NCBI GenBank assembly: GCA_047495785.1
Contig: JBLDXI010000042.1
Location: 1,674,001 to 1,738,000 of the forward strand
Direction: 5' to 3'
DNA from: Lepidodermella squamata
Lineage: Eukaryota > Animalia > Gastrotricha
DNA length: 64,000 nucleotides
Shown here: piece by piece, positions 1 to 15,221 of the stretch
Position numbering within the stretch: the stretch's first letter is position 1
How the letters are laid out: the number at the start of each line of letters is the position of its first letter
Program-made: the position numbers and the translations under genes
Notes under the pieces: generated by a model
The model's input: only the letters and a program-made list of their open reading frames with translations
Told to the model about the DNA's origin: nothing
The model's database searches: none

Positions 1-10
1 ATTTTGCTAG

Positions 11-1554
11 AGATTCAGCGACGAGTCTTCAATATGTGGATATAAATTCCATGTATCCATACGTTCTGTGTAGCAAACAGTTTCCGTGCAATAACATCTC
101 GGCACAAGTATTAAGGTGGCGATTGAACGACGAAAAACTGAGAGCAAAGTTTTTCGACGAAAATGACCCAGCATTTGGCCTAGTTTCTGCGAAGTGTTGT
201 CCGAATCCCAGCCTAATCGTGCCATGTTTGCCTTATAAGTCCCCCGATGACGATCGCCTGGTTTTTATCAGTTGCAGAACATGCTATCTGGAGAAAAACG
301 TGACGACTAGATGCAATCATGACATGGATCAGCGCGCAATTTCCGGAGTTTGGACCAGTGAGGAGCTTCGCATGGCTGTTGTACAATTCGGTTATAACTT
401 GGTCGAGGTATACGAAATATGGCACTTTCCAGACCGTAGCAACTTGCAATTCAGAGAATTCATTCTCTCGCTTCAAAAATTGAAGCTTGAAAACACTGTT
501 CTTGCTCCAACAGTTGACGTCGAGCAATACGTCACCGAATGTCGGGAAAGGTACGGAATCGAGCTCGACCGGCAAACCATGCTGTCGCCGAATGCTTCGA
601 TGAAACAGATTTCCAAGATCCTTCAAAATAGGTAGGTCGATTAAACAATCTTGAAATTAACCCTAATTTATCTCTCAGCTTCTACGGTCGCTTTTGCCTA
701 CGAGCAAATAATTCCGTGGTGAAATATTTGGACTCGCCAGAACAGTTGATCGAGCTTTTTGAAGCTCCAAGCAAGGTTATTCACACAATTCAGCCAGTAG
801 GACCAGATGACGAGCACCAAAAAGTCCGCGTTTCATATTCAGACGCTCCAGAATATGAACAGCCATGCGCTACCAACTCTGAAATTACAGCATCCTTTAT
901 AACTTCTTACGCAAGAATGAAACTTTACGAGGAGGTTCGCAATAATTGGACTAAACGAATTTCAAGCTAATTAACTTTGATTTCAGATGGCCAAGCTGGG
1001 TTCCAGACTTGTATACTGCGACAGTAAGCAAATTCGCTACCTAAATTTCGTAGAATTTTGATAATCTTGTATTACGCAGCCGATTCGTTGATTTACACGC
1101 ACCAAGAGGGTGAATACAAAATTCCAGAGAGTCCATTTCTGGGAGACTTCAAGTCTGAATTGAGCGAGGGAGAATTCATTGAGTCTTGGGTAGCGATTTC
1201 GCCAAAATCCTATTCATTTGTCTCCAACTTGAGGTATAGAATTAATTTTTAGACTTGTTTTTTTTTTAATTAATTTCTTTTAGAACTGAACTCAAGTTTA
1301 AAGGAATAACCCAAAACTTGGCGGGGAAACGGTTGACTCACGAATCTCTAATTAAGCTGCTAACCGACTACCTTAACAATTTTGCTGCTGAAAGTGCGAT
1401 AACTGTCGATCAGACCGTATTTCGTAGGCGTCACGTTCCAGCATCCGTAACTCTTGAAAATATTGAGAAAACAGTATCCCCTCACCTTAATGACAAACGA
1501 ATATTTGATCCTTTGTCATTCACCTCTATCCCTTACGGATATCTTCCTCATTAA
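11..1554 (+). CDS. Protein-primed family B DNA polymerase, C-terminal part; exons 11-631, 679-934, 987-1023, 1080-1233, 1284-1554
   Basis: Motif A is DINSMYP. Removing GT-AG introns 632-678, 935-986, 1024-1079 and 1234-1283 restores KILQNS|FYGRF (motif B), YCDT|DS (motif C), KFKG and the C-terminal SIPYGY. Probable further acceptor at position 10. Confidence 0.95.
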
Positions 1555-1598
1555 AATAATAATACGATTTGATCGCTTTCTCTCGTAGATTTTAGAAA

Positions 1599-2030
1599 AT
1601 GACAAAAAGTATCGCATCGGAGCGTTTAGCGCCTGAGAGCAAGGCCTTGTACGAATTTATCGAAGACGAGGTTACCTGCAGCATCTGCTTGGGAATAATG
1701 ACTTCTCCCGTCTACCTAACAAGTTGTCATCACGTCTATTGCGAATCCTGCCTATGCCGATGGGGCGAGAGATGCCGCGGTTCTGATGCTCGATCTCTTA
1801 TATTCAAAAGAGCGACTTGTCCCAAATGTCGAGAGTTTTACTCGCTGTTGGACATCAATCCTGGACCTGGTGTCGTCGAGCGGCTAGTTTCGCGCATGCT
1901 TTTCAGTTGCATTTATGAAAAGTATGGTTGCTCAGTGAAGCGTGACCATTGGGGCATCAGGGCTCATCAAAGGATCTGCAAGGAGAAAGGAGCTGCTAGT
2001 AAGCGCAAAGTTGCCCAACAGCTTGCATGA
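1599..2030 (+). CDS. RING-HC plus TRAF/Sina-type zinc finger protein (putative E3 ubiquitin ligase)
   Basis: CSIC..CHHVYCESC..CPKC RING, followed by CIYEKYGC..H...C zinc finger. Confidence 0.85.
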   Translation: MTKSIASERLAPESKALYEFIEDEVTCSICLGIMTSPVYLTSCHHVYCESCLCRWGERCRGSDARSLIFKRATCPKCREFYSLLDINPGPGVVERLVSRMLFSCIYEKYGCSVKRDHWGIRAHQRICKEKGAASKRKVAQQLA

Positions 2031-2194
2031 AAAAAAAAAATGCTTGATAATTTAGCGTCAATAATCCAAAGTTGCTCAACAGTTTGCATGTAAATACATC
2101 TCGCATTAACTTCAATAATCCATTAAATTCCAAATATAATATATATTTTTTTAATAATTTTAGAAAATTAAAAATTAAAAATTTCCGCCGAATC

Positions 2195-2571
2195 ATGGTG
2201 ATCGCCAAGTCCTATGCTGCGTATATCAGAACCGACAAAGATCTCCTATTTTATACGCCCTTCAACGAACAAAGCACGACTGATGATATGGCCAAGAGAA
2301 TGCGAGAATTCTGGCCAGCGAACTGGGGCGAAAAGCCTGGGGACATCAAGTTTGAATGCAAAGGCCGATCAATACGGAAGACAGTTCGCCTGTCAAGTAA
2401 GCTTTCCGCCATGCCTGACTAAACTTGAAAGTTTACTCGCTAGGTTTGAGCCGCTTGGTTGGTGGTCGCATGTACGTATTCTATGGGAAGGCGAAACTCG
2501 GGACAGCGACACCTGGAAAGGTGGACTGCCCCGCCTGCGAAAAAGGAGAGTGCATCATGTCAGAATTCTAG
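2195..2571 (+). CDS. UBL3/MUB-like ubiquitin-fold protein, copy 1 (intron 2397-2443)
   Basis: TDDMAKRMREFWPANWGE resembles the UBL3 signature (..VYDNWPMDW). Spliced C-terminus ends ..DCPACEKGECIMSEF*. Confidence 0.65.
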
Positions 2572-2667
2572 GTGGTGAACGCAGTGACTTATCAATTATT
2601 CCCCTCTGTTTATTCACATTAAACAATGTATATAAAATTTTGATTAATCTTAGACGTTACTTTAATC

Positions 2668-3043
2668 ATGGGATTCCGAGAACCCTCTTCATTCGAGTCG
2701 AGCCCTTCACCAGATGATGATCTCGAGATTGGCTATGCCGCAACGCTAATATGGCGGAATAAGGACCAAATAGTCATCCATTGCTGCAAGTCGTTTACTG
2801 TCGACGACATTATCTGGCAATTGTATCACGAGTGGCCCGAAAGTTGGGGCCTTAAACCGGCGTTGAGTAGCATTTACCTGTATCACTGGGGAGTTCCGTT
2901 GAAGCGAGAAGCCCGCCCCATAAGTAAGTTGTGCCAAGATGACCTCAAGCCCGTTTCAATATATCTTTTCAGAATATTGCGAGTACTATGGCCAAGGCGG
3001 TATAGAACTGAAGGTTAAAATCAGTGATGATGACGAGGAGTGA
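2668..3043 (+). CDS. UBL3/MUB-like ubiquitin-fold protein, copy 2 (intron 2924-2972)
   Basis: TVDDIIWQLYHEWPESWG; phase-1 intron at the same position as in copies 1 and 3; spliced end KYCEYYGQGGIELKVKISDDDEE*. Confidence 0.7.
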
Positions 3044-3130
3044 TTGATCGCATCTCTAGTAAATCGAGTCTCTAAGAAGGTTTTTTTTTCTTCTAAAAAT
3101 TAGAGAAATTTAAAACAATATTCAGCGAAC

Positions 3131-3377
3131 ATGAGGCTGCGAATTCGAATTGCAGATGGCCTCGAGCCAACTTTTTGTATCAGAGACATGGGACATTACA
3201 AAGCAAGTAATTTTGCGCTAGTTGAAATTTGCATCTCTTAACTGCTTCTTGCAATAGGAGTTAACAATTCGAAACTTTCCAGGCTATGCTCGCGTTTCCG
3301 TTGGCAACTCGGCGATAGTTAAGATGTATCGCCAATCTGAAACCGTCACCGTTATTTGCATCTATAAGAAGCAATAA
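3131..3377 (+). CDS. Small hypothetical protein (~63 aa), probably spliced (3203-3257, GC donor)
   Basis: ATG follows an acceptor-like TTCAG. MRLRIRIADGLEPTF...|ELTIRNFPGYARV...YKKQ* reads through only with a GC-AG intron; an alternative GT donor gives a different short product. Confidence 0.3.
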
Positions 3378-3433
3378 ATCGCCTTAATTGATTTGTATTG
3401 TGGACATTTTAGATAAATTTGAGAATATATTTG

Positions 3434-3829
3434 ATGGAAACTCCCCGCCCTTCATCTTCGAGCAGCATCGAGTCGCACCACTCGGCTGACTCCATGCGGC
3501 CTTGTGCTCCACGCGAACGCACTGTTGTTCTACGATGGATAGATGGTAGTGAAATCGTCATGCCATTTAGCAAATATTGCACGGTAGCCGATCTCATCTT
3601 CATGCTGTATGAAAAATGGCCGGCAGAATGGGGGGAAAGACCGCAGTACAGGAGACTTTTGCTGTGCGATAGTTACTGCCGAATTCCTAAATTCGCTCGA
3701 ATGATGGGTAAGTTAATGTTTATTAAATTCCACCGTTAAATGACTGAATTTTATTAACCTTAACTTACAGAGCTCGACAGACGATCTGGAAGGACGTTCT
3801 TGTTATTCGTCAAGCTGACAGCATACTGA
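3434..3829 (+). CDS. UBL3/MUB-like ubiquitin-fold protein, copy 3 (intron 3708-3770)
   Basis: VVLRWIDGSEIVMPF..TVADLIFMLYEKWPAEWGE..RLLL; spliced end ELDRRSGRTFLLFVKLTAY*. Confidence 0.7.
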
Positions 3830-3899
3830 CACGGATTAACTAACTAATAACTGTTTGCATGCATCAGCTAAATTTAGGCAGCATTATTACATAGCGAAT

Positions 3900-4211
3900 A
3901 TGGATAGTTTGGATTCCCTCAGCTCATCTGACGATTCATGCGTAGCAGACGATTTCAGCGTCCTTTTAACATGGATGAATGGTGACGAACTCATAATGAG
4001 ATGCCCTCGAACGGATTCTGTTGATGATTTGCTGTCAAGACTCTATGATGACTGGCCAGTGTATGGATGGGGAAGACGACCCGCGGATCCTGCCGTGTTA
4101 GCGCTGAGCAACGCCAGACAATGCTTACCAAGATCCCAACTGCTTATGAGGGATCACACTGGAGATGCTACGGGGCATGTCATCTTGAAGTTTTATGTAC
4201 ATTTGAAGTGA
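3900..4211 (+). CDS. UBL3/MUB-like ubiquitin-fold protein, copy 4 (intronless)
   Basis: LLTWMNGDELIMRCPRTDSVDDLLSRLYDDWPVYGWG...VILKFYV. Confidence 0.7.
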   Translation: MDSLDSLSSSDDSCVADDFSVLLTWMNGDELIMRCPRTDSVDDLLSRLYDDWPVYGWGRRPADPAVLALSNARQCLPRSQLLMRDHTGDATGHVILKFYVHLK

Positions 4212-4385
4212 TTCTCGCAATAGCTTGTATTATCGCCTCAGTATACCTTGTATATCAATCTATAACCTCATTATAAATAGGAATGTAAACTGTTTTTTAG
4301 AGTGATTAGCTTTGTATGTAAAATTGATCCCATCGGCAAATTTAGGCGAGTAATTTAAGGCTTTATATAGCATCAAAAGAGCAAA

Positions 4386-4610
4386 ATGGATTGGGGTAGC
4401 TCATCATCTGATGATTCATGCATAGCCGACGATTTCTGCGTCCTTTTAATCTGGGAGAATGGCAACACACTAACAACGAGGTGCCCTCGAACGGATTCTG
4501 TCGATGATTTACTGTCAAGACTCTACGCTCGGGGTGCGATCTTGGAGCTGCCGGGTTCTGGGGGACCGACTTTGCTTGCTGTATTTATTAAAAGGATTAG
4601 AACTAATTAA
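4386..4610 (+). pseudogene. Truncated duplicate of UBL3-like copy 4
   Basis: DNA closely matches copy 4 up to ..SVDDLLSRLY, then diverges and lacks the WP..W motif. Confidence 0.6.
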
Positions 4611-4649: not shown

Positions 4650-5585
4650 ATGATTAACATGTCATGTAAAATTGATTTCAACTCCGCCATGCATCCGAAT
4701 TTTGCGTGGGCGCTAGTTCGAGGTTCGAAGGTGGGACGCGATTTCAAGCCTCGGGTGACACTACATTGCCCTTATATTTTCAGCCATTTGACCTTCTTCG
4801 AGCCACTAGCAGCAGGTCCAGTGTGTCCCAGTCGATGATGAAAGTGATGTGCATCTCTGACACTCATAACGAAGACATCGTACCACTTGTTAGCAAGCTT
4901 CAGCGATCATCGCAAGCCGACATTTTGATCCATGCTGGAGATGCGACCACGTTCGGTAGTCTTGACGAAGTGAGAAATTTTGATTCTCAGCTTGCGAAAT
5001 TGAGACCGCTGTTTCACCAAGTAATTGTAATCGCTGGAAACCACGATCGCTCCTTACAATACGACCGCAATTTACTGCGCGATAATTGCACCTACTTGCA
5101 GGATAGCTCTGTAAAAGTGAATGGCTTTCTTTTCTACGGCGCTCCATGGTAATTTATAAGGCAATAATCATCGGCTTTGACGTGTGTGCAAAACAGGACA
5201 CCACTCAGCGAGAGCTGCCATTCTGCTTTTACGCTCAACAGAGGCAACGAACTCGGTGAAAAGTGGGCATTGATACCCGCTGAGACGGACGTTTTGGTAA
5301 CACATTGTCCACCGTTAGGTGCTCTGGATCAAACGTCAACAGGTGATCACCTGGGATGTCTCTCACTAGCTTATCATGTCTTGGGTCGGATTCAACCACA
5401 ACTCCATGTTTTCGGCCATTGCCACTACAGTAAGATATATCAAAACAACACACGAATCATATTACAGATTTATTTCAGGTAACGGAGAAATGCAATGTGA
5501 ATATACGCACTTTGTGAATGCGAGCATTTGCGATGATAACAACAGGCTTCAATTCATGCCGAGGCTGGTCGATCTCTACCATTAG
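4650..5585 (+). CDS. MPPED1/2 (239FB)-family metallophosphoesterase; introns 4731-4783, 5149-5196, 5430-5478
   Basis: Calcineurin-like motifs ISDTH, HAGD, AGNHD, VTHCPP, HVFGHCH and FVNASIC become contiguous after splicing. Confidence 0.9.
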
Positions 5586-6550
5586 TCGACCTTTGGAACC
5601 CACGATGACCAATTCCCGCCAGTCTGCTTGGCAATGTGCTCGTTATTCTGCTCACCCGCCGCCGCCTGCTCTTCCTTACTACGTAGCAAACGTGGTGATG
5701 CCGCTACCCGCGGATTAGTCGCGTTCAACGCTCCTGCTCTGACCATGTTTCGAATACGGTCTTGCATTCTCGGACTCAGATTAGCGTTCTTGTTAGTTGC
5801 CTTGTCGAGAAATTCTACCAACTCCCATGAATCTATCAATTGTCCTTCCGAGTTGACGTATTCGATTTTATTTGCAGGCGAAATATAGACTGATTGTGGC
5901 TTTGAACTCCCGCGCAAGTGATTCAAAATTCGAGCTGCAGCAGATTGTTGTGTTTTACTCGGGAAATTTTCGAGGATCCTGCCGTCCGTCAAGTTTACAA
6001 GACTGATTTTATCTTTCGGCTTCGCCTTCTGATCAACTATGTCCTCATCGTTGTTTTGTTGCTCGTCTTGGCTAAACTGCTCTATTTTTGGCGAAGTAGT
6101 ATTACCAATCACCCTGCGTTTGGGAGTGCCGTTGGGCGAAGTCCTGTATTTCTTCGCTAATTTTCGCAAGATTCCGGGCGTTGGTGCAGGGCTTTCGTCC
6201 TCCTGCTCTTCCGCCTCTTCATCTGCCTCCTGCTGCTGCTGCTCCTTTTCCTCGGCTTTACCTTCAAGGATTTTCAATTCCTTTACGACTCGTTGAAACT
6301 CTCGAAACGCAGAGTTGAATTTGTACAGCTTTTCGCGGGCATCTTCGTCGCTGACTTCAGATAACGATGTCAGCAGCTGAGTCGCATTACGTTTAAGATG
6401 ACCTTTTTGCGCAGGTTGAGAGGCTTCCTTTATCAACCGCTTGCTCTCTGCCTCGAGTGCTGATGGTGCTTCCGTTTTATTAGCTTCACTAGAAGATCCA
6501 AGCACAAGAGCGTAACGCTTCGCATGCAGACCAATGTCTGTCGATTTCAT
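5582..6550 (-). CDS. Polinton hypothetical protein (322 aa, coiled-coil/acidic; C-terminal QTGG protease-site motif)
   Basis: Long ORF whose start overlaps the stop of the upstream gene (ATGA); ends KQTGGNWSSWVPKVD. Confidence 0.75.
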   Translation of the reverse strand: MKSTDIGLHAKRYALVLGSSSEANKTEAPSALEAESKRLIKEASQPAQKGHLKRNATQLLTSLSEVSDEDAREKLYKFNSAFREFQRVVKELKILEGKAEEKEQQQQEADEEAEEQEDESPAPTPGILRKLAKKYRTSPNGTPKRRVIGNTTSPKIEQFSQDEQQNNDEDIVDQKAKPKDKISLVNLTDGRILENFPSKTQQSAAARILNHLRGSSKPQSVYISPANKIEYVNSEGQLIDSWELVEFLDKATNKNANLSPRMQDRIRNMVRAGALNATNPRVAASPRLLRSKEEQAAAGEQNNEHIAKQTGGNWSSWVPKVD

Positions 6551-6966
6551 GGTTTTCGGGTTGCCTTAACAATAGCTTCAACGATTGTAGGCAGTATTCC
6601 TATAACAATCCTGCAGATAAACGTCATAGTCGAATTTGAAAAATGCATACCTGCTGCAGCAGATAATAGCGGAACAACGAACGCAGCACCGCCTTTTTGA
6701 ACTATGAATGTTCGGTTACCACTGATTGTTCTGTCACTACTACTCAGTTTTTTGATAGATTTCCTAAATTTACGCAGCTTTGGTGCCAAATTATCCGGAA
6801 TCTGTAGATTTTTGTTGATAAGATTCAGGCAGATTTCACTGATAATTCTGATCACGGAATCAGGAGCTATCGATAATAGCTGTCGTCTTCTGTCGGCTGT
6901 TTTTGCTTTATGAATTTCCCTTAAAAAGCCCAGTACTCGATCAGATTTATTCAATGGCTTACTCAT
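6547..6966 (-). CDS. Virion protein with adenovirus pX/mu-like C-terminus (intron 6600-6650)
   Basis: Removing a 51-bp in-frame GT-AG intron gives QKGGAAFVVPLLSAAAG|ILPTIVEAIV, resembling adenovirus pX GGFLPALIPIIAAAIG. Confidence 0.75.
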   Translation of the reverse strand: MSKPLNKSDRVLGFLREIHKAKTADRRRQLLSIAPDSVIRIISEICLNLINKNLQIPDNLAPKLRKFRKSIKKLSSSDRTISGNRTFIVQKGGAAFVVPLLSAAAGMHFSNSTMTFICRIVIGILPTIVEAIVKATRKP

Positions 6967-7031
6967 GCTTAATAGACATGCTACCAATAATTTAAGAAAA
7001 AAGTCCGTTTCATCTCATTTAAATATACATT

Positions 7032-7768
7032 TTATTTAGGAACATAAATGACACCAGGGTAACTTCCTACCCCGGTTCTGTAACGCATGTATTCAGGACA
7101 GTTAGGACTCAGATCTATTAACAAATAATTGTGACTGCCTTTGCTAGTTTCCATTTCAAAGCTCTCAACTAAAAAGCGCCACCGCAACGGTTCCAGCTGC
7201 AGAGCAAGGTAGCGAAATGCTGTGAGGTCCGCTCGATGCCGAAAAATGAACAAGTATTTCGCATTTAGGGTCATTTCTTTGGAAACTTTTCCCTTACTGA
7301 ATATGGCTTGTTGGGTGAAAAACACTGACAAGTTCATGTGATGAGAGTATCGATAGAATAACTGTAAAATCTTGGGATCGTTTCGACCCGTATCATATAG
7401 ATCATCTATGAGGAGTAAGGTGTGTTTGTCTTCACTATTCTCGAATTCTTCAAAATTGAGTTGTTCCAATCCTTTCCGAAAGTCGATACTTACTCCACGA
7501 ATCCTCTCAACTTCGTCTTTGATTTGCTGATGCATCTTAGTTTCGACGCCGTAAAACCATACGATTCTTTGCGGCGGCGGAGAGATGGACTCGAGATCGC
7601 ACAGAATGCTCCGAATAAGCCATGTTTTACCTGAAAAGTACCTTCTAAATACCAACTATTCAACTTGCTATATATCATACCTGCTCCGCTGGGACCTATT
7701 ACAAGAGAGCAGAATGGAGCTTGCAGACTCAGCGAAAAGTCAGTCTCTGATGGCAAATTGCTTGACAT
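7032..7768 (-). CDS. A32/FtsK-HerA-like genome packaging ATPase (intron 7631-7680)
   Basis: Walker A GPSGAG|KT restored by splicing; Walker B LLLIDD; HHMNLSVFFTQQ motif. Confidence 0.93.
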
Positions 7769-8304
7769 GATTGGCGACCGTCACACGTGGATAATTTGTG
7801 CGCGGCCTTGCTTAGCTTAAATAGCTTTTTCACTTGGTCTACTACAAACTTGTCAGTCTCTGGCGGCATCGGCAGCATCCGCGTAATGCTATTAATTGTT
7901 GCGCCCCGCGATAGCCAATGCAAACTCCAATATGCATAGTACCCACAAACAGCTGATGTATCCCCCTGGTATTTTCTCCCGTTAAAATCATAGTAATCTG
8001 CCCCATTTATGTCCTTTAAAAACTGCTCAATATCTTGATTGTAGAAAAAACCCCGTTGGCCGTAGCTGTCAAATAGTGTTGCGGGTTCATTATTTTGTGG
8101 AACGTATATAGATAGCCAGTGGCGCCCAGGCTGGCCTGCAGCGTCCGTATTTACAATCAAGGCCATCGGCCGATCACTCAGTCTTCGATATTCAGCTAGG
8201 AAATCCCACGGAATTGTCTTTTTAACAGCAAGTTTACTTATTATCTTGTCACAGGCTAATAGACAGTCAAGTTGGAGCGTGTTAAGTTGCTCTGCGGCAT
8301 CCAT
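7729..8304 (-). CDS. Adenain-like cysteine maturation protease
   Basis: IVNTD..PGRHW, FDSYG and Q....VCGYY catalytic motifs. Confidence 0.92.
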   Translation of the reverse strand: MDAAEQLNTLQLDCLLACDKIISKLAVKKTIPWDFLAEYRRLSDRPMALIVNTDAAGQPGRHWLSIYVPQNNEPATLFDSYGQRGFFYNQDIEQFLKDINGADYYDFNGRKYQGDTSAVCGYYAYWSLHWLSRGATINSITRMLPMPPETDKFVVDQVKKLFKLSKAAHKLSTCDGRQSCQAICHQRLTFR

Positions 8305-8307: not shown

Positions 8308-9597
8308 TTACGTAAAGTCGACCAAGACGTTCCTTGCAAAGTTTAGCTCAATGACTTGGTCAGTTTCAAAGTAGCAAAGCAATATAAGATTGTCCTCCAA
8401 TGCCGATTTAAATAATAGGTCTATATTAAGGACCCCAGTTTTCACCAAACTATATGCACTTCGACTCGAATCGGGTGAAAGGTCAAACCCGATGAACGAA
8501 AACCCATCTTTCGAATACTCGGATAGCGTGATACCATTGGTCTTGGCTGAATATGGGAACAGCGTCTCTCTTAGCGCGTTTAACGCTCGAGCCGATTTAT
8601 TACTACCATCTCCGATATCAAGCGGACTGTTGGGTACATGCTCGCTGTCTATCATTACTGAGACGCGCTGCAACCCGGCGTTTTTGAAATCATATGGGCT
8701 GGTGCTAAAATCACCCTTAAAGTCCTTATCGCTCACAAAACACATCACTAATCGTCTTGGAATTTTCCCGATAAGAACATGTCCCAAATTATAATTTAGC
8801 GATCCCTTTTGCAAGTTCAATATCTTGATAAAAGATCTATTAACGCCGTATTTAGCAGTAGTTTTCGTTAGGGTTCGGTTTAACGCCAAAGTGAATTGCG
8901 GGGACACTCGGACACGACGTAATTTCAGCTTGGCATCGGTCACAGTCAACGTGAATTTCTCTTCATCTGTACTTGCCTTCATTAGCACAAATGCATCGGA
9001 AGCCCTAACAAACGTTAGCTTGAAAGGCGTTGCCGGTATCAGGAATTTCGGTTGGGAAAATAGTTCTAAATGCGGCCGACCTATTAGCACCATTTCACCT
9101 TCCTTTGCCCACGCCAACCGCTTAACGTGACCTTTGCCTGCGACGTCGCTCACCTTGCTCGCTTCGTCGGCAAAGTAGCCTTGAAGTGCTAGGTAGCTAT
9201 CCTTAACAGCATGGTCATAGCTTAGAAGTGTTGAAATGTATGCTTTGTAGTTGTAAGTTGGAGCTGGTTCGCTTATTTGCGTGTTATTGATACTCATGTC
9301 TATCTGACTGAACATGCTATGTAATAGCAGGTTGACTGGTGCGCACGTGATCGCCGTTTTTGCCTTGGCTGGGTCCGTGTTTACGACTTTACAGGTAATT
9401 TCAACATACGATCGGCTCAGGTCTGTCCAGTCGTTGCTCGGTGGAACGTCAAAATCAATCCTTGACTGATTAGCTATAGCTGAAACTGGGCCATATTCTG
9501 TAATGTAGTTACTCTCAATCTCTACTTGCGTAGGGTTCAGCGAAAAAACGTTGAGCTCAGCGCGAATAGCGTTCTCAGAAGATGGGTGTACGTACAT
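8308..9597 (-). CDS. Major capsid protein (double jelly-roll, Polinton PY/hexon-like)
   Basis: 429 aa; ELNVFSLNPTQ..IE, PVNLLLHSMFSQID, YNYKAYI and PRRLVMCFV..F.G...SPYDF motifs of animal Polinton MCPs. Confidence 0.9.
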   Translation of the reverse strand: MYVHPSSENAIRAELNVFSLNPTQVEIESNYITEYGPVSAIANQSRIDFDVPPSNDWTDLSRSYVEITCKVVNTDPAKAKTAITCAPVNLLLHSMFSQIDMSINNTQISEPAPTYNYKAYISTLLSYDHAVKDSYLALQGYFADEASKVSDVAGKGHVKRLAWAKEGEMVLIGRPHLELFSQPKFLIPATPFKLTFVRASDAFVLMKASTDEEKFTLTVTDAKLKLRRVRVSPQFTLALNRTLTKTTAKYGVNRSFIKILNLQKGSLNYNLGHVLIGKIPRRLVMCFVSDKDFKGDFSTSPYDFKNAGLQRVSVMIDSEHVPNSPLDIGDGSNKSARALNALRETLFPYSAKTNGITLSEYSKDGFSFIGFDLSPDSSRSAYSLVKTGVLNIDLLFKSALEDNLILLCYFETDQVIELNFARNVLVDFT

Positions 9598-9644: not shown

Positions 9645-10116
9645 TCAGAAGTAGACACGTTTCCCTGCCTTCTTTTTACCGACTGCTTTGCTTTTACGCT
9701 TAGCAATGACGCGGCGGCCCCGGCGGCGCCTGCGTCTTCCAGTCCCAATTTGCGATCCTACATTTGCAATGACATCCTTGGCTACTCCCTTTAATCCTTC
9801 CACTGCTCTCCGCTTCAGTATCGTTTTCGGACTGGCGTCCTTATTTTCCAACAAATCGCTTGCGATATTAGCCGTCGTGTGACTCAGATTTCGGAATATC
9901 GGTCCCAGCAATGGAATAATATGATTACGAAAAAATCCGGCGGCTACGCTTCCGAATCCGTTTCCTGTCTATAATAAACTATGCCTAATCAATCTAATAT
10001 TTATCACTTGATGTTACCTGATAAGTAGGGAATACGAGTGATTGACCACGAAACGGTTCTATCCCGTACCCGCTTTGTTGCAACAAAAACGATTCATAAG
10101 CATCTGCTGAATGCAT
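9645..10116 (-). CDS. Core/membrane-lytic precursor (pVI/pVII-like) with Arg/Lys tail; intron 9969-10017
   Basis: Spliced product MHSADAYESFLLQQSGYG...YQ|TGNGFGSVAAGFFRNHIIPLLG...QIGTGRRRRRRGRR; three QxGxG motifs. Confidence 0.8.
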
Positions 10117-10122
10117 GCTTCT

Positions 10123-11869
10123 TTATTTAGCTATAGGTCTAATTTGCACAAGTATTACTGCTTTACCGCTAACAAATTTCACTGGCAAGCCAGAGTCTTT
10201 AAATATCTGAATCTCTATTACGGATAACACGCGGCGTTTAATCGGAACAAATATTGGCTTTTCAAACATTATGGAGAAAAATCCGCCTCTTTCATTAGTT
10301 TTTTCTGTTGGTATCACTCGCAGAAGTGGAGTGCGCGTGTTTCCCACGTACACGTCATCAATTACATCAGCGTACAAAAACAAGAAGGGCATTCCATAGT
10401 CCAACTGAGGCGCGAATTTCGCTGTCATTTTCTCTTTGACATCATGATAAGTGTAGGTGTATTCTACTGTTGATATGACTTGCTGCTCTTTCGAGTCTGA
10501 TTGGGGTTTAGCTGAAGCACTGATGTTCGCAGGCTCGTTCTCGTCAGGGACTTCGTCCGAGGCCGCGTTCTGAGCTTCGCCGCTGGAGCTCGTAGTGCTG
10601 GGCGCTGGTACGTTCTCATCAGGCTCGTCATTGTTCCCGGGGACGTCGTTCGAGGCTGCGTTCTGAGCTTCTGCGGGGTTGTTGGGTGTGACTTCGCCCT
10701 GAGCTTCGTTGTTGGAGATTGCGGGAGGATCGGTGTTGGAAGCAGGTACGTTCTCGTCAGGGACGTCGTCCGAGGCCGTGTTCTGAGCTTCGCTGCTGGA
10801 GCTTGGTGGAGGCTCTTTCTTGGCTTCGACTGCGTTCTGAGCATCGCTGCTGGAGCTTGCGGAAGGCTCTTTCTTGGCTTCGACAGCGTTCTGAGCATCG
10901 CTGCTGGAGCTTGCGGGAGGCTCGCTGTTGTTTGCGGCTGCACTATTGCTCGGCTCTTCGGTTTCTTCCGCTACATCTTCATGCTGTTCGATATCCACGT
11001 TGTCCTCGGCATTTTCCGCCTCGGATCCCCCCCATTCATCGTCTCCATATGCTGCTACAAATTGAACCGGTTCATTACGTTTCGCTATCTTCCGAGGTGG
11101 TTGCTCTTCTGTTGGAGCCGATCGCCGGATCCTACTAGTCTTTGCTATCTCCTCCTGCATGAATAATTGACCAGTAACTTTAAGCTTGTTGTCATTTATT
11201 GATGACAATGCCATGCGATATGGTATTTTCTGGCGGTTTCCTCGAATAACATATCCCAGCATGTGCATGAACGCTTCGGCTTTCTCCCTATATTTCCGCT
11301 GGTTTTTCATGTTCTTTGCGCCGTACTCGTTGAATGCTATGAAGGCTTCTGGGAATCCAAGGACTTGAGCTAATTCTTTCGGTATGAATATGCCCCAACG
11401 TCCTTGTTCTACCTTTACGGATACCCGATTTGCTATTTTCGTATAGTCAAATGATATAGCTTTGGTTATCTGCTTGATTTCTGTCACCATGTGCTCCAAC
11501 AACTCCTCGATGCTAGAGTAGTAGACGCCACCAACTTGGCACTCGTGCATTTGCGACGCGTCAAATGGATCCGCCAAGTTTACTTCAGTATTGTGCACCC
11601 AGTCACTGTCAAAGATATAATATTTTGTTGGTTCCAGTGATTCCCACGCTGCCGGTCCGTTAAATTCTACCAGCCCCATTTCCCATTGACCTACGTACGT
11701 ACGCGTTCACTTAACAGTTTGGTTTATTTCTTTTTGAATACTTACCTACTGTACCTAGATCAATCTCATTAGCTAATTTCACGCGATACGAAGACGGCGT
11801 GTTATCAGGAAATAGATCATTCGATGCGTTCGACGGCAAATAGAGCAGAAATTCTTGCTGTGCGCTCAT
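10123..11869 (-). CDS. Minor capsid protein (penton) with a large acidic low-complexity insert; intron 11691-11745
   Basis: N-terminus FLLYLPSNAS..FPDNTPSSYRVKL..GTV|GQWEMGLVE; C-terminus LYADVI..YVGNTRTPLLRVIP..IEIQI.KD.G.PV.F..GK. Confidence 0.9.
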
Positions 11870-12132
11870 TTCGTATTATTAGCAATTGTCAAGGCTATGC
11901 AATTGATCAGTCGATCGTTCCAAGATCGTGCGACTTCCACAGTGCAGTACGTGATAATTATTGCGAACAAGGATAATAAGCCGATGCTCTTCTTCTTACT
12001 CTTAAGTGTCGCTGCTAATCTGCTACTGACAGAGCTGCTATGTGGACTACTCGTCCTTTTAAATAAGCTCGAGTCCACTTGATCTTCCCCTGCAGATGGC
12101 ATGCGACATGGTAGTGATGTTGTAGCACGCAT
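11866..12132 (-). CDS. Small single-pass membrane protein (88 aa)
   Basis: KKK followed by hydrophobic SIGLLSLFAIIITYCTV; its stop overlaps the penton ATG and its ATG abuts the upstream stop. Confidence 0.55.
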   Translation of the reverse strand: MRATTSLPCRMPSAGEDQVDSSLFKRTSSPHSSSVSSRLAATLKSKKKSIGLLSLFAIIITYCTVEVARSWNDRLINCIALTIANNTK

Positions 12133-12210
12133 TTATCGGCGACGACGTCTGTGGTATCGTTTGCGTGCTGTGTGTCTTCGCTTTCGGATTGCTCGTCTAG
12201 GTCCTGGCAT
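12133..12210 (-). CDS. Protamine-like 25-aa DNA-condensing peptide
   Basis: MPGPRRAIRKRRHTARKRYHRRRRR*; fills the gap between the integrase stop and the next ATG. Confidence 0.65.
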   Translation of the reverse strand: MPGPRRAIRKRRHTARKRYHRRRRR

Positions 12211-12211
12211 T

Positions 12212-13453
12212 TTATTTCCGCTTCCGCTTCGATTTTTGCGCCTTTAAATATTCATTTTCTACGGCTTTGATTTCTCCGATCGGTTCCCACGAGCTCTGCG
12301 ATTTAGGAAACCCTACCCAACTGACCAGCACTCTAGTTGTTCCGTCCTTGAACTTTCTCTTTTCCTTACCAACTTCGGCTATCAGGTACTCATCAGGAAG
12401 CTTGACCTTTTGAAGCTCGTAACTATAAAAAACTCCGGCCAGCGGCTCTGTGTAGTCTCCCTTCTCCTTATTCCACTCATTGAGCTTATAAGTGTAGGGA
12501 CCGAATTTGTCTGGCTTAATTATCCTCGAAATTTTAAAGTATTCGTCCGTGTATACAAAGTGGCGGGCTCGATCGAATACCCCCCTTTCAGCTGATATCC
12601 GAACTACATCTCCGACCTGGAATTTCGCCTTTGATTTTCTCTCTTTTTTATGTTCTTCAACAGGACCGTATATATTTTCATAAGCTTGAAATTGCTTCAG
12701 GCTGTCCTCGTATATGTCCAGATTGAGGTCTTTGTCGCTTTCAATTTTCCTACCGGTTTCTTTGTCATTATACAGCTCCGCCGGTGTAAATTTCGTTGAA
12801 GAGTGAATGCTCTGATTATAGACTCGGACAATATCCTGCAAGTCATCTACGTATCTTCTATCATTCCGTGCTATCGCTAGTTTCGCAAGTCTCATGCGAA
12901 GCAATTTGTTGAACGACTCAATCTGAGGAACCTTCTTCTCTGAATTAGTTGCAAAATAATGTATTGATTCTGATTTCAGATATTGCTCTACATGCTTGTT
13001 GAAAAATTCTGATCCTCTGTCAAATACGACAGCTGACGGTTTTTGCTTGGCATCTCTCAAGACCAATTTCAGTGCTCTTAACGTTTCTAGACCAGTCTTA
13101 TTGAGCATCGGCTGCACCCAGGCGAATCGGCTATATGTATCCTTTGCTGTCAACAAGTATTGAACGTTATCGTTCTCGTCTTTGACGTTTTTCACATCCA
13201 GCAAGTCCATGGCGAACATACTTCTTCTACTGAAACAAGCTACTTTACGCATTAGCCGATTCCGCGTTCCAACTTGCTTATACACGCTCCATGCTCGCTG
13301 GTTCCCGAGCCACTCTCGCACTTCCTTGAAAGAAATCCTGCGATTTGGATACTTGGCCTTATACGAGTTGTACAGCGATGATATACTGCCGAGACTCCCC
13401 TTCTCCGCTGGTGTAAAATATATTTTCCTGAGACCTTCATCCGTAGCCGACAT
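12212..13453 (-). CDS. Retroviral-like (rve) integrase with C-terminal chromodomain
   Basis: DDE motifs FAMDLLD, VFDRGSEF and IESFNK; chromodomain-like VLVSWVGFPKSQSSWEP. Confidence 0.93.
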   Translation of the reverse strand: MSATDEGLRKIYFTPAEKGSLGSISSLYNSYKAKYPNRRISFKEVREWLGNQRAWSVYKQVGTRNRLMRKVACFSRRSMFAMDLLDVKNVKDENDNVQYLLTAKDTYSRFAWVQPMLNKTGLETLRALKLVLRDAKQKPSAVVFDRGSEFFNKHVEQYLKSESIHYFATNSEKKVPQIESFNKLLRMRLAKLAIARNDRRYVDDLQDIVRVYNQSIHSSTKFTPAELYNDKETGRKIESDKDLNLDIYEDSLKQFQAYENIYGPVEEHKKERKSKAKFQVGDVVRISAERGVFDRARHFVYTDEYFKISRIIKPDKFGPYTYKLNEWNKEKGDYTEPLAGVFYSYELQKVKLPDEYLIAEVGKEKRKFKDGTTRVLVSWVGFPKSQSSWEPIGEIKAVENEYLKAQKSKRKRK

Positions 13454-13497
13454 TCTCGATCTATATTATTACATTTCCAAGCGTTTTAAATATAGGA
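13454..13497. promoter_or_regulatory. 44-bp divergent intergenic region (putative bidirectional promoter)
   Basis: AT-rich (TATATTATT, TTTTAAATATA) gap between the head-to-head integrase and kinase ATGs. Confidence 0.4.
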
Positions 13498-14426
13498 ATG
13501 GAAAATTATTCATACATCCGATTAGTTGGATCTGGATCTTTTGGAAGTGTAAGCTTACAGCGACACGTTAAACTTAACCGAATCTTTGCTGTGAAAATGA
13601 TAAATACCACGCATCCTGTATTTCTTGAATCTGCACATCGCGAAGTCCAGTCTCTCCAATTGCTCAAAAATGCTCCGAACGTCGTCAAGTAATGATTAGA
13701 TAACAATCCGTTGCATTTAATGCTCATTTTTCGCACAGATTACACGAGGTACTGTATACGTCAAGACGGGCTTTTCTCGTCTTGGAATGCCATCTTATGG
13801 ATTTGAGAAAGCTGATAGAACTCCTGTCTCGACCTTGGCCGCTCACACTACTCGAACGATGGTTCAGTCAGCTATTGTCCGCTCTGGATTACATCCATGA
13901 GAAAGGCATCATTCATCGCGATGTCTGCCCACAGGTTTGCTTTTCCCAACGATGCGTGTACCCAACTACCTTTCTTCTACAGAATGTTCTACTTCAATCC
14001 AGCTGGGTCGATGTTTCCCTCGGAGATTTCGGCATCTCTCGATTAGTACCTGACCATGATACCTGCCCTAACATGACAGGGACTGTTACCGTTTTTCGCT
14101 ATCGGGCGATTGAAATCATGTTCCCAAAACCTTACTACACTAACAAGATTGATATTTGGTCACTAGCTGCTACTATCATTGAGCTCGTCACTCTCACTCC
14201 TTTTTTTAACGCTCGAACCCCTGTAACCATGTTAGCTGATATGAAATCTAAAACTTCTAGTCGCGATGTTTTCTTTAGGTCGTTAGAGACATTTGTGCAT
14301 TGCGATTTTTCTGAATATCGTCATCTGCTAACTACGCTGTACTCGATGTTTGATAACGACCCGATCTACCGTCCAACTGCTAGCACCTGTTTATATCGCG
14401 CTTCTCTTCGAACCTGGTATTATTGA
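13498..14426 (+). CDS. CMGC/CDK-like Ser/Thr kinase; introns 13689-13738 and 13935-13982
   Basis: GSGSFG, FAVK, AHREV, HRDVCPQ|NVLL, DFG, TVTVFRYRAIE and DIWS motifs. Confidence 0.9.
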
Positions 14427-15062
14427 ATGCAAACTTTCGACATCAATGTTTCAGTTTCAAACGTTGTCGCTACTTTCCACGCTGGATGCACTATTGATTT
14501 AAAGCATCTGGCTAATCACGGAGTTAACACATATTATGATAGCAGAAAAATCCCTGTTTCAACTAAGATTCGATTTCCCTCTGGTGCCACTGCAATGGTT
14601 TACAGCAGCGGTAGTGTTATTGTCATCGGCGGCAGGGGATCGCGAAATGTTCCAGATTTCGAGTCTCAGGCGTTCCTAATCATGCTAAAGCTAAAAAAGT
14701 GGATGTCATCGTCTGAAATATCATTCAATAATTTCAAGATACAAAATATTGTCATCACCGGACAGTTACCCTTCCGGTTTTCAAACATTTCATCGCTTTA
14801 CTCTAGTCTCTCCTCTCTGCCAGGACTACGAGTAGTTTACATACCAGAATCATTCTGCGCTATGCGAATCACTTTGAACAATAAGAAGATAAGCTTCTTC
14901 CCGAGTTCTCACAAGTTTAACATTCTCGGCGTTGATAGCATAGATCAAGGATTATCTATTATTCAGTCCTTTGCTCAGCTGTGTATCAACATCTACGAGA
15001 AGGATCTATCAGACCTTACCCTGACCAAAGAAGATCTGGATTTTCTATTTGGCAATATTTGA
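14427..15062 (+). CDS. TATA-binding protein-like factor (most like TRF2/TBPL1)
   Basis: Two TBP repeats: DINVSNVVATFHAGCTIDLKHLA..ATAMVYSSGSVIVIG and FKIQNIVITG..YIPESF..KISFFPSSHKFNILG. Confidence 0.85.
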   Translation: MQTFDINVSVSNVVATFHAGCTIDLKHLANHGVNTYYDSRKIPVSTKIRFPSGATAMVYSSGSVIVIGGRGSRNVPDFESQAFLIMLKLKKWMSSSEISFNNFKIQNIVITGQLPFRFSNISSLYSSLSSLPGLRVVYIPESFCAMRITLNNKKISFFPSSHKFNILGVDSIDQGLSIIQSFAQLCINIYEKDLSDLTLTKEDLDFLFGNI

Positions 15063-15069
15063 GTTGGTA

Positions 15070-15221
15070 CAAATAAAAAATCGATCTTCCGCTGATCACC
15101 CGTGTTTTATTTTTCTCATGTTCCGATTTTCAACCTAAATTTTCAAAAAGTACCGATTTTTCATTCACTTTTCATTCCCAACTAATTTACGCATTTTTTA
15201 CTCGAACTAACTAATACTACT
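15070..15221. repeat. Probable right terminal inverted repeat of the Polinton
   Basis: Noncoding, ends AACTAACTAATACTACT; next 6 bp (CTCACA) are the predicted TSD. The partner TIR is outside the window, so the inner boundary is a guess. Confidence 0.6.

What the first reader, a model, noticed from the sequence alone, without database searches (positions are those of the whole stretch)
1..15221. Intact Polinton/adintovirus carrying a host-control toolkit (E3 ligase, UBL array, phosphoesterase, CDK-like kinase, TBP-like factor)
Seen: once spliced, every core replication, packaging, capsid and integrase gene in the window is open, and five classes of eukaryote-type regulatory genes lie inside the terminus. 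Known: Polintons usually carry a small core plus a few cargo genes, and TBP-type factors are typical of giant viruses. Inference: a possibly active virion-forming element with its own ubiquitin, phosphorylation and transcription modules. I do not recall this combination being described.
Basis: partly seen in the sequence, partly recalled or inferred. Interest (0 to 1): 0.9.

Follow-up and report, generated by a model that had tools for sequence, protein, structure and literature searches.

The report
Integrated Polinton virus-like element with accessory genes
The first 15 kb of the window is the right-hand part of a Polinton/Maverick-type virus-like element sitting in an invertebrate animal's chromosome, and it carries an unusually rich but not unprecedented set of host-type regulatory genes; whether it is complete or still active cannot be told from this window.

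Summary
Window 1-15.2 kb carries a protein-primed PolB (cut by the left edge), a double jelly-roll major capsid protein (model pLDDT 86.5; Foldseek E about 1e-14 to PBCV-1, mavirus and Sputnik capsids; closest viral match a Maverick copy in a bracovirus), an rve+chromodomain integrase, and weaker candidates for the A32-like packaging ATPase, adenain-like protease and penton. Four accessory classes are solid: RING, MPPED2-like phosphoesterase, CMGC-like kinase and TBP-like. The "UBL array" is a real family of five tandem small ORFs, but its ubiquitin fold has only weak, convergent support.

"Intact" is not shown. The left end and any inverted repeat lie outside the window. PolB is interrupted three times and the ATPase once. 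The interruptions look like introns of about 50 nt (47-108 nt of DNA that relatives' proteins do not cover), not 1-2 nt frameshifts. One PolB junction stays unresolved. RING, UBL and phosphoesterase are certainly internal. Kinase and TBP-like lie beyond the integrase, so their membership depends on an unverified terminus at 15221.

Cargo next to the integrase, UBL-bearing kinases in nematode Mavericks, and TBP- and TRAF-like genes in related viruses are already published. Verdict: a new variant of a known kind, of moderate interest.

The parts
1..1554 (+). Protein-primed family B DNA polymerase, C-terminal roughly 500 codons. It is cut by the window's left edge and interrupted 3 times by intron-like stretches.
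   Evidence: Pfam DNA_pol_B_2 E 5.5e-9 on the first open piece. 2175 relatives, best 36-41% identical. Relatives align colinearly across all 3 junctions, with median excess DNA of 47, 108 and 47 nt. The C-termini of 5 of 6 relatives coincide with the stop.
1599..2030 (+). RING-finger protein, 143 aa (candidate E3 ubiquitin ligase)
   Evidence: Pfam zf-RING_UBOX 2.7e-7 and zf-C3HC4 4.4e-7, both above their cut-offs. Uninterrupted ATG-to-stop ORF.
2195..2422 (+). UBL-like small ORF, unit 1
   Evidence: Member of alignment A2. Pfam Rad60-SLD_2 E 0.15.
2668..3018 (+). UBL-like small ORF, unit 2
   Evidence: Member of alignment A2. tblastn with unit 4 gives E 4e-8.
3434..3739 (+). UBL-like small ORF, unit 3
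   Evidence: Pfam Rad60-SLD_2 E 0.0026, below the cut-off. Member of A2.
3900..4211 (+). UBL-like small ORF, unit 4
   Evidence: Pfam Sde2_N_Ubi E 0.003 and Rad60-SLD_2 E 0.24. AF2 model pLDDT 55.8. Foldseek top hits are UBL3, MUB and ubiquitin at E 0.3-2.
4386..4610 (+). UBL-like unit 5, a truncated duplicate of unit 4
   Evidence: 122 nt are 85% identical to unit 4. The DNA similarity ends mid-domain, and the conserved second half of the family pattern is absent.
4835..5585 (+). MPPED2-like calcineurin-type metallophosphoesterase, with 2 intron-like interruptions
   Evidence: Pfam Metallophos E 3.6e-11. Two successive open pieces match PDB MPPED2 chain residues 61-181 (E 4e-12) and 189-257 (E 3e-14), colinear with about 54 nt of excess DNA. 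The third piece was read by eye only.
5582..6550 (-). ORF of 322 aa, function unknown (acidic, low-complexity middle)
   Evidence: Open ORF. No Pfam, PHROG or PDB match.
6547..6987 (-). ORF of about 146 aa, function unknown
   Evidence: Open ORF. No family match.
7032..7780 (-). Candidate A32/FtsK-type packaging ATPase, with the reading frame interrupted once
   Evidence: Pfam Pox_A32 E 0.017, below the cut-off, on the larger piece. Walker-type motifs were read in the translations. GT..AG-bounded stretches of 47-50 nt exist at the junction. No relative was available to test it.
7729..8304 (-). Candidate adenain-like cysteine protease, 191 aa, open
   Evidence: Pfam Peptidase_C5 is the only hit, E 0.11, below the cut-off. 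A His/Asp/Gln-Cys pattern was read by eye. The PDB sequence search was blank.
8308..9597 (-). Double jelly-roll major capsid protein, 429 aa, open
   Evidence: 35 homologues of 414-453 aa at 21-35% identity, one carrying Pfam DJR-like_dom. AF2 pLDDT 86.5, pTM 0.86. Foldseek PDB: PBCV-1 Vp54, SGIV, mavirus and Sputnik capsids, E about 1e-14, probability 1.0. BFVD top hit is a bracovirus-borne protein at 28% identity, E 1e-29, followed by adomavirus LO7, MELD virus and adintovirus entries.
9645..9968 (-). Open piece encoding a small, very basic (Arg/Lys-rich) tail. It has no ATG of its own and is possibly the second exon of a core-protein-like gene.
   Evidence: Translation. No family match.
10123..11679 (-). 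ORF of 518 aa: N-terminal domain, acidic/Ser-rich repeat linker, C-terminal beta-rich domain. Candidate minor capsid (penton) protein.
   Evidence: Open ORF. 54-nt tandem repeat. No homologue, Pfam or PDB match. The assignment rests on position and on reading the sequence; it was not tested.
12212..13453 (-). Retrovirus-type integrase with C-terminal chromodomain, 413 aa, open
   Evidence: Pfam rve E 9.4e-8, at the cut-off. Chromo E 4.2e-5, just below the cut-off.
13498..14426 (+). Eukaryotic-type Ser/Thr protein kinase (CMGC-like), with 1 intron-like interruption. Its ATG lies 44 nt from the integrase ATG on the other strand.
   Evidence: Two open pieces match Pfam Pkinase positions 1-62 (E 1.3e-7) and 62-258 (E 1e-22), colinear. 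Best PDB match is CDK2 at E 2.4e-13, then MAPK1.
14427..15062 (+). TBP-like protein, 211 aa, open. Its ATG directly follows the kinase stop.
   Evidence: Pfam TBP E 3.4e-15, with a strong first repeat and a second stretch seen only at a lax threshold. PDB TBPs E 2e-10.
15063..15221 (.). It holds an AATAAA at 15072. Its status as a TIR is unverified.
   Evidence: Sequence. The terminal 25-mer is unique in the window. No repeat partner in the window.

Best explanation
Window 1 to about 15.2 kb is the right-hand part of a Polinton/Maverick-type (adintovirus-like) virus-like element integrated in the chromosome of an invertebrate animal.

Shown:
- A replication gene (protein-primed PolB).
- A virion module on the minus strand: a double jelly-roll capsid protein, with candidate penton, A32-like ATPase and adenain-like protease.
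- A chromodomain integrase.
- Two accessory blocks. Block 1 (RING protein, four full and one truncated UBL3/MUB-like small ORFs, MPPED2-like phosphoesterase) lies between PolB and the virion module, so it is internal. Block 2 (CMGC-like kinase directly followed by a TBP-like gene) lies between the integrase and the proposed end. The kinase start codon is 44 nt from the integrase start codon, which leaves no room for a terminal repeat between them.

Inferred mechanism:
- The element is expressed in the nucleus by host RNA polymerase II and the spliceosome. Accessory and core genes alike carry interruptions of about 50 nt that relatives' proteins skip, and TATA-like boxes are enriched upstream of its genes.
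- The accessory proteins would act on the host: ubiquitin-system rewiring (RING plus UBLs), phospho-signalling or cell-cycle control (kinase), hydrolysis of a phosphoester signal such as a cyclic nucleotide (MPPED2-like enzyme), and redirection of transcription initiation (TBP-like). This would favour replication or persistence of the element.
- Whether this copy is complete or still functional is not known.
For: - Core identity: PolB, integrase; capsid fold, nearest viral hits of Maverick/adomavirus/MELD/adintovirus type; the only weak Pfam hits for the two other virion-module ORFs are Pox_A32 and Peptidase_C5, the families expected here.
- Accessory genes.
- Paralogue array.
- Intron-like interruptions: kinase pieces abut in the Pfam profile at 62/62. 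Phosphoesterase pieces are colinear on MPPED2 with about 54 nt of excess DNA. PolB relatives are colinear with 47/108/47 nt of excess DNA. Frame-compatible GT..AG stretches of 47-50 nt exist at 6 of 7 junctions.
- About 8 kb of minus-strand genes have long open frames, which argues against random decay.
- Compact layout: 44 nt between the integrase and kinase ATGs, and the kinase stop abuts the TBP ATG.
- TATATT(T) lies upstream of 6 (5) of 14 genes.
- Integration in an animal chromosome: a CPVL-type carboxypeptidase whose best named relatives are all animals, plus CUB/Kringle and a LINE-type RT in the same window.
- Precedent for cargo beside the integrase: Widen et al., bioRxiv 10.1101/2022.07.12.499685.
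Against: - The left end, TIR and target-site duplication are outside the window, so neither the bounds nor completeness can be shown.
- Nothing marks 15221 as an end: there is no compositional step and no repeat partner.
- The ATPase junction has no relative to test it.
- One PolB junction has no single short GT-AG solution, and the polymerase motif next to it does not read as fully canonical in the open piece as it stands.
- The kinase catalytic loop is non-canonical at one position, and only the first TBP repeat scores strongly.
- The UBL fold, protease, ATPase and penton are all below significance.
- No expression data are available, and all functions are inferred from domain families.
Confidence: 0.68

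Rival explanations
1. A dead endogenous fossil. The element is a decayed insertion, the interruptions in PolB and the ATPase are inactivating lesions rather than introns, and the accessory ORFs are relics with no present function.
For: PolB is interrupted 3 times and the ATPase once. One PolB junction lacks a simple GT-AG solution. UBL unit 5 is a truncated duplicate. Kinase and TBP-like are very divergent from cellular proteins. Composition is identical to the host's, as expected after long residence.
Against: - All tested interruptions add 47-108 nt rather than 1-2 nt, and they match the size of the interruptions in the two accessory genes that are colinear with cellular references.
- Capsid, integrase, protease, and the 518-, 322- and 146-codon ORFs have no stops over about 5.5 kb of coding sequence. 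Neutral decay would not spare them.
Confidence: 0.2
2. Kinase and TBP-like are host genes, not cargo. The element is truncated just beyond the integrase, or ends there, and the two genes belong to the flanking chromosome.
For: No terminus could be verified. There is no compositional difference between these genes and the host flank. Both carry host-style features (one short interruption, an AATAAA downstream). The ORFs further right also lack family matches, so the true boundary is open.
Against: - Only 44 nt separate the integrase and kinase ATGs, and no base separates the kinase stop from the TBP ATG. That is virus-like compaction.
- Both proteins are far from cellular orthologues: E 2e-13 and 2e-10 to the best PDB entries.
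- Published Mavericks carry cargo at exactly this position, between the integrase and a TIR.
Confidence: 0.2
3. Assembly chimera. A free virus contig has been wrongly joined to host sequence, so the element is not integrated at all.
For: None of nine window ORFs is in the public protein collection. The nearest capsid relatives are mostly metagenomic.
Against: Composition, CpG ratio and interruption style are uniform across element and host. The sequence is continuous with no N. Spliceosomal-type interruptions in core genes fit a nuclear resident.
Confidence: 0.05

Closest known systems
Polintons / Mavericks / adintoviruses (Polintoviricetes; Adintoviridae, also called Eupolintoviridae)
   Same: Protein-primed PolB of the pfam03175 type, rve integrase with chromodomain, double jelly-roll capsid protein, candidate A32-like ATPase and adenain-like protease, and a size class of at least 15 kb (size and TIR ranges from PMC10748475).
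   Different: The nearest capsid relatives are only 34-35% identical and the nearest PolB relatives 36-41%. Core genes as well as cargo carry intron-like interruptions. There are nine accessory ORFs of five classes. TIR, TSD and the N-terminal OTU domain of PolB could not be examined.
Nematode Mavericks with a cargo region between a TIR and the integrase (Widen et al., bioRxiv 10.1101/2022.07.12.499685 / Science 2023)
   Same: Cargo directly beside the integrase. Cargo genes with introns. Kinase cargo. Ubiquitin-like folds among cargo.
   Different: - There the kinases are KRMA (HipA/CtkA-like) and each carries a fused N-terminal UBL. Here the kinase is a eukaryotic Pkinase without a UBL.
- Here the UBL-like units are separate small ORFs in a tandem array in a second cargo block, between PolB and the virion module.
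- No WASP protease or fusogen is seen in the window.
- Core genes there are reported as intronless.
MELD viruses with adintovirus-like PolB from non-animal eukaryotes (Starrett et al., PMC8502044, Fig. 5 legend)
   Same: [quoted passage not shown]
   Different: Those are from non-animal hosts. The paper says adintovirus accessory genes of animals are of other kinds (PLA2, gasdermin-like, LXCXE 'oncoid' proteins). No sequence comparison with them was made here.
Maverick copy carried by Cotesia sesamiae Mombasa bracovirus (BFVD entry R9XLG5)
   Same: Best viral structural and sequence match of the capsid protein: 28% identity, E 1.2e-29.
   Different: Only the capsid protein was compared. The low TM-score (0.41) reflects a poor target model.
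TBP-like factors of giant viruses and CDK-like kinases of herpesviruses (from my own knowledge, not tested here)
   Same: A virus-encoded copy of a host transcription-initiation factor or cell-cycle kinase, used to redirect host machinery.
   Different: Those are much larger genomes. No homology beyond the shared Pfam families was tested.

Membership tests
Polinton/Maverick (adintovirus-like element) | Protein-primed family B DNA polymerase | tested here: met
   Pfam DNA_pol_B_2 E 5.5e-9, above the cut-off. 714 relatives at E<=1e-10. Only the C-terminal part lies in the window.
Polinton/Maverick (adintovirus-like element) | Retrovirus-like (rve) integrase | tested here: met
   Pfam rve 32.7 bits against a cut-off of 32.6. 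Chromo E 4.2e-5.
Polinton/Maverick (adintovirus-like element) | Double jelly-roll major capsid protein | tested here: met
   AF2 pLDDT 86.5. Foldseek probability 1.0 to PBCV-1, mavirus and Sputnik capsids and to Maverick, adomavirus and MELD entries.
Polinton/Maverick (adintovirus-like element) | Minor capsid (penton, single jelly-roll) protein | not tested
   The 518-aa ORF is a candidate by position only.
Polinton/Maverick (adintovirus-like element) | FtsK/HerA (A32-like) packaging ATPase | tested here: inconclusive
   Pox_A32 E 0.017, below the cut-off. Walker-type motifs read by eye. The frame is interrupted once.
Polinton/Maverick (adintovirus-like element) | Adenain-like cysteine protease | tested here: inconclusive
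   Peptidase_C5 E 0.11, the only hit. Catalytic pattern read by eye.
Polinton/Maverick (adintovirus-like element) | Terminal inverted repeats (100-1500 bp) and a 5-8 bp target-site duplication | not testable with these tools
   The left end is outside the window. No partner for 15063-15221 lies inside it. Fetching more of the contig or sister copies was left out.
Adintoviridae in the sense of Starrett et al. | N-terminal OTU-like domain on PolB | not testable with these tools
   The N-terminal part of PolB lies left of the window.
TATA-box-binding protein family | Two tandem TBP repeats forming the saddle | tested here: inconclusive
   The first repeat is strong (Pfam E 3.4e-15). The second stretch appears only at a lax threshold. 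PDB alignments cover query residues 9-130, and up to 171 for archaeal TBP. The length of 211 aa fits two repeats.
Cyclin-dependent kinases (CMGC) | Pkinase fold with CDK-specific features (cyclin-binding helix motif, T-loop) | tested here: inconclusive
   The Pkinase fold is met (E 1e-22). CDK2 is the best PDB hit, but only at E 2.4e-13, and MAPK1 is close behind. I saw no cyclin-binding signature on reading the translation. No phylogeny was made.
Ubiquitin-like (UBL3/MUB, Rad60-SLD_2) fold | Beta-grasp fold recognised by profile or structure | tested here: inconclusive
   Rad60-SLD_2 is the top or only Pfam hit in 3 of 5 units, at E 0.0026-0.24, below the cut-off. The model has pLDDT 55.8 with a beta-beta-alpha start. 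Foldseek top hits are UBL3, MUB and ubiquitin, E 0.3 or more.
RING-type E3 ligases | C3HC4 RING finger | tested here: met
   Four RING Pfam models are above their cut-offs. Ligase activity is inferred.
MPPED2-type metallophosphoesterases | Calcineurin-like metallophosphoesterase domain colinear with MPPED2 | tested here: met
   Pfam Metallophos E 3.6e-11. PDB MPPED2 residues 61-181 and 189-257 are matched by successive pieces.

The most novel reading that the evidence does not exclude
A still-functional animal polintovirus of about 20 kb with its own transcription-initiation factor (a TBP paralogue acting on the TATA-like boxes upstream of its genes). It would also carry a host-control set: a RING ligase, a family of free UBL3/MUB-like proteins, a cyclic-nucleotide-type phosphodiesterase that could blunt nucleotide-based antiviral signalling, and a CMGC-like kinase. 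All of it would be expressed through host splicing, possibly from a polycistronic, trans-spliced plus-strand block.
Probability: 0.12. Interest if true: 0.75.

Novelty: new variant of a known kind. Interest (0 to 1): 0.48.

Why it matters
Polintons are the proposed ancestors of several eukaryotic DNA virus groups, yet little is known about how the animal ones deal with their hosts. This copy has an internal ubiquitin, kinase, phosphoesterase and TBP-like gene set, and intron-like interruptions even in its core genes. If the genes are transcribed and shared by sister copies, that would show such small elements carrying a layered host-manipulation and transcription module of the sort usually credited to giant viruses and herpesviruses. 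It would also extend the cargo-carrying behaviour documented in nematode Mavericks to another animal lineage. If the copy is a fossil, it is an ordinary endogenous element with an interesting cargo list.

Tried and rejected
- **518-aa ORF as capsid.** I first took it for the major capsid protein. The homologue search was blank and so was the PDB search. The 429-aa ORF proved to be the capsid protein instead.
- **Intact Walker A.** A scan of all six frames found none in any minus-strand ORF. This led to the two-piece ATPase candidate.
- **P-loop ORF at 15426-16913 as the packaging ATPase.** Rejected. It has a signal or membrane segment, no family match, lies beyond the proposed end, and the Pox_A32-like candidate is elsewhere.
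- **Exact look-up of nine window ORFs.** None is in the collection.
- **Cluster names of the best PolB and capsid relatives.** Mostly unnamed metagenomic entries and one beetle entry, so they gave no host clue.
- **Host identity.** The carboxypeptidase search gave only 43-45% identity to molluscs, ticks, fish and insects. The host is an animal, lineage unresolved.
- **Rfam and tRNA scans.** Nothing found.
- **Second copy or terminal-repeat partner in the window.** None.
- **Compositional boundary (GC, GC3, CpG).** None.
- **PDB sequence searches** for the protease, the ATPase piece and the C-terminal domain of the 518-aa ORF: blank.
- **UBL structure model.** Too poor for a significant fold match.
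- **Literature.** The searches for 'Polinton' with 'TATA-binding protein' and 'Polinton' with 'ubiquitin ligase'/'protein kinase'/'cargo' turned up no description of this gene set. The TBP/TRAF note in PMC8502044 came from the 'adintovirus' search.

Full report
**What is in the window**

A mechanical ORF and stop-free-segment survey, followed by Pfam scans, showed this layout:
- On the plus strand at the left edge, the C-terminal part of a protein-primed family B DNA polymerase (DNA_pol_B_2, E 5.5e-9).
- Then a RING-finger ORF, a run of small ORFs, and a calcineurin-type metallophosphoesterase.
- From about 13.45 kb down to 5.6 kb, a block of minus-strand ORFs that begins with an rve+chromodomain integrase.
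- Beyond the integrase, back on the plus strand, a protein kinase and, abutting it, a TBP-family ORF that ends at 15062.

The rest of the window holds a LINE-type reverse transcriptase, CUB/Kringle ORFs and a CPVL-type serine carboxypeptidase. The best named relatives of the carboxypeptidase are all animals (mollusc, ticks, fish, insects), at only 43-45% identity. I therefore take the host for an invertebrate animal of a poorly sampled lineage, and I treated the element as a virus-like element of animals. Nothing looked human.

**Core genes**

- **Capsid.** The 429-aa minus-strand ORF has 35 homologues of the same length at 21-35% identity. One carries Pfam DJR-like_dom and one is named 'F54H12.2-like'. 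With that alignment, AlphaFold2 gave pLDDT 86.5 and pTM 0.86. Foldseek matched double jelly-roll capsid proteins at E about 1e-14 and probability 1.0: PBCV-1 Vp54, Singapore grouper iridovirus, mavirus 6g45 and Sputnik. In BFVD the best match, at 28% identity and E 1e-29, is a protein recorded under Cotesia sesamiae Mombasa bracovirus, followed by adomavirus LO7, 'MELD virus sp.' and 'Adintovirus sp.' entries. This is the major capsid protein.
- **Protease candidate.** The 191-aa ORF next to it has Peptidase_C5 (adenain) as its only weak Pfam hit, E 0.11.
- **ATPase candidate.** The gene after that has Pox_A32 as its only weak hit, E 0.017. Both values are below the cut-offs, but these are exactly the families expected here.
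- **Penton candidate.** The 518-aa ORF has an N-terminal domain, an acidic/Ser-rich linker with a 54-nt tandem repeat, and a C-terminal domain. It is a penton candidate by position only. All searches with it were blank.
- **Unassigned.** Two further ORFs (322 and 146 aa) and a very basic open piece without its own ATG have no assignment.

**Interruptions**

Counted by gene, without places:

| Gene | Interruptions |
|---|---|
| PolB (part in the window) | 3 |
| ATPase | 1 |
| Phosphoesterase | 2 |
| Kinase | 1 |
| Capsid, protease, integrase, 518-, 322- and 146-codon ORFs, RING, TBP-like | 0 |

The fifth UBL-like unit is a truncated duplicate.

What the interruptions look like:
- The two kinase pieces abut in the Pfam profile, at positions 1-62 and 62-258.
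- The first two phosphoesterase pieces match PDB MPPED2 residues 61-181 and 189-257, leaving about 54 nt of DNA unaccounted for.
- I spent the single exhaustive protein search on the first PolB piece (2175 relatives, best 36-41% identical). I then aligned 150 relatives to each open piece separately. They run colinearly across the three junctions, with median excess DNA of 47 nt (68 relatives), 108 nt (54) and 47 nt (3). Five of six relatives end where this gene stops.
- These interruptions are therefore insertions of about 50-100 nt relative to relatives' proteins, not 1-2 nt frameshifts.
- Frame-compatible GT..AG stretches of 47-50 nt exist at six of the seven junctions. The middle PolB junction has none under 130 nt and stays unresolved. 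The polymerase motif beside it does not read as fully canonical in the open piece as it stands.
- No relative was at hand to test the ATPase junction.

I read this as short spliceosomal introns in both cargo and core genes. That is plausible but unproven, because no splice predictor or RNA data were available.

No search or fold was run on joined exons, so that step is left out.

**Accessory genes**

- **RING.** Four RING models are above their cut-offs.
- **Phosphoesterase.** MPPED2-like.
- **Kinase.** A Pkinase fold at E 1e-22. The best solved relatives are CDK2 (E 2.4e-13) and then MAPK1. 'CMGC-like' is fair; 'CDK-like' is only a best-hit label. On reading the sequence, one catalytic-loop position is non-canonical and I saw no cyclin-binding signature.
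- **TBP-like.** Pfam E 3.4e-15 for the first repeat, a second stretch only at a lax threshold, and PDB TBPs at E 2e-10.
- **'UBL array'.** This is a real family of five small ORFs, each with its own ATG, spaced about 470-770 nt apart. Three units have Rad60-SLD_2 (the UBL3/MUB family) as top or only Pfam hit, at E 0.0026-0.24. A poor model (pLDDT 55.8) found UBL3, Arabidopsis MUB and ubiquitin first, but at E 0.3 or more. The lines of evidence agree, yet each is non-significant. Unit 5 shares only the first half with unit 4.

**Are the accessory genes inside the element?**

- The RING, UBL and phosphoesterase block lies between PolB and the virion module, so it is internal whatever the termini are.
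- Kinase and TBP-like lie beyond the integrase. In favour of membership:
  - The kinase ATG is 44 nt from the integrase ATG on the other strand.
  - The TBP ATG follows the kinase stop directly.
  - Both proteins are far from cellular ones.
  - Nematode Mavericks carry a 2-5 kb cargo region with intron-bearing genes at exactly this position (Widen et al.).
- Against certainty:
  - The left end is outside the window.
  - The 159-nt tail up to 15221 has no partner in the window.
  - Composition (GC3 0.43-0.53, CpG o/e about 1) is the same in element, cargo, flank and host.
  - The ORFs to the right have no family match.

Polinton TIRs are 100-1500 bp (PMC10748475), so a TIR could fit in the tail. 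That is all that can be said.

**Comparison with what is known**

- Widen et al. describe Maverick cargo beside the integrase, with introns, including kinases and proteases that carry N-terminal ubiquitin-like domains.
- Starrett et al. (PMC8502044) give adintovirus PolB an OTU-like domain, list animal adintovirus accessories of other kinds, and in the Fig. 5 legend mark TBP-, TRAF- and UCH-like genes in related MELD viruses of non-animal hosts.
- Coral polintoviruses show patchy, diverse accessory genes.
- My literature searches found no description of this particular set (RING, free UBL-like array, MPPED2-like enzyme, eukaryotic kinase, TBP-like) in one animal Polinton. It is nonetheless a variant of a documented behaviour, not a new kind of element.

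They would be virus-like elements of animals, or I could not tell beforehand.

1; a script of mine joined window segments in memory around the unresolved PolB junction to count possible GT-AG solutions. It printed only lengths and splice-site hexamers and saved nothing. I stopped that line and do not use its result.
2; a script built an unused in-memory concatenation of gene segments while computing per-gene composition. It was not used, printed or saved.
3. Early scripts listed stop-free segments with coordinates, as the ORF listing does. In addition, one notebook entry and my working reasoning hint at where the ATPase junction lies.

**Verdict**

The window holds a genuine, largely open Polinton/adintovirus-like element in an invertebrate chromosome, with an internal accessory block and a probable second one. 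Completeness, activity and the right-hand boundary are unverified. Novelty: a new variant of a known kind. Interest: moderate.

Noticed in passing
window 54416-58864: The CPVL-type serine carboxypeptidase coding sequence is split at one point (relatives' residue 259 on both sides) by a 3.1 kb insert. The insert is bounded by two 100% identical 300-nt direct repeats (55109-55408 and 57901-58200) and looks like a very recent small LTR-type insertion. The region has raised G+C (0.49).
   Followed up: partly
window 30.7-34.7 kb, 45.5-49.1 kb and 23.28-23.73 kb: Tandem duplication, about 14.5 kb apart, of a region with CUB/Kringle-domain ORFs (74-91% identity), plus a third partial copy.
   Followed up: no
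window 27059-29002 (-): Open 647-aa reverse-transcriptase ORF of LINE type (RVT_1 E 7.6e-43).
   Followed up: no
window 15426-16913 (+): 496-aa ORF with an N-terminal hydrophobic segment and Walker A/B-type motifs. It has no Pfam or PDB relative and lies just right of the proposed end of the element. Whether it belongs to the host or the element is unknown.
   Followed up: partly
window 20445-21143: Inverted repeat with 62-nt arms, 92% complementary, 575 nt apart, and a second nested pair (20542-20800). It resembles a foldback or MITE-like element.
   Followed up: no
90 nt upstream of 14 element genes (window 1.5-14.4 kb): TATATT occurs upstream of 6 genes and TATATTT upstream of 5 of the 14 (binomial p 4e-6 and 1e-6 before correcting for the number of k-mers). 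The 44-nt integrase-kinase spacer holds such boxes in both orientations.
   Followed up: partly
window 1.5-4.4 kb (+), 4-50 nt upstream of the ATG of the RING ORF and of all five UBL-like ORFs: Each ATG is preceded by an acceptor-like (A/T/C)TTAG(A/G) (TTTAG in five of six; CTTAG upstream of UBL unit 2). This could be a 5'-UTR intron acceptor, or a spliced-leader trans-splice site of a polycistronic plus-strand block. It was read by eye only.
   Followed up: no
whole window: CpG observed/expected is about 1 in element, cargo and host genes alike, so the host shows no methylation-driven CpG depletion. Interruption sizes of 47-50 nt, with acceptor hexamers read at the candidate junctions ranging from TTTCAG and TTTTAG to TCTCAG, AAACAG and GCACAG, point to a host with very short introns.
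   Followed up: partly
window 18439-18994: ORF with 129/153-nt internal direct repeats (88-96% identity) and a (GTA)13 microsatellite at 18839-18878. It is a repetitive, low-complexity protein with no family match.
   Followed up: no
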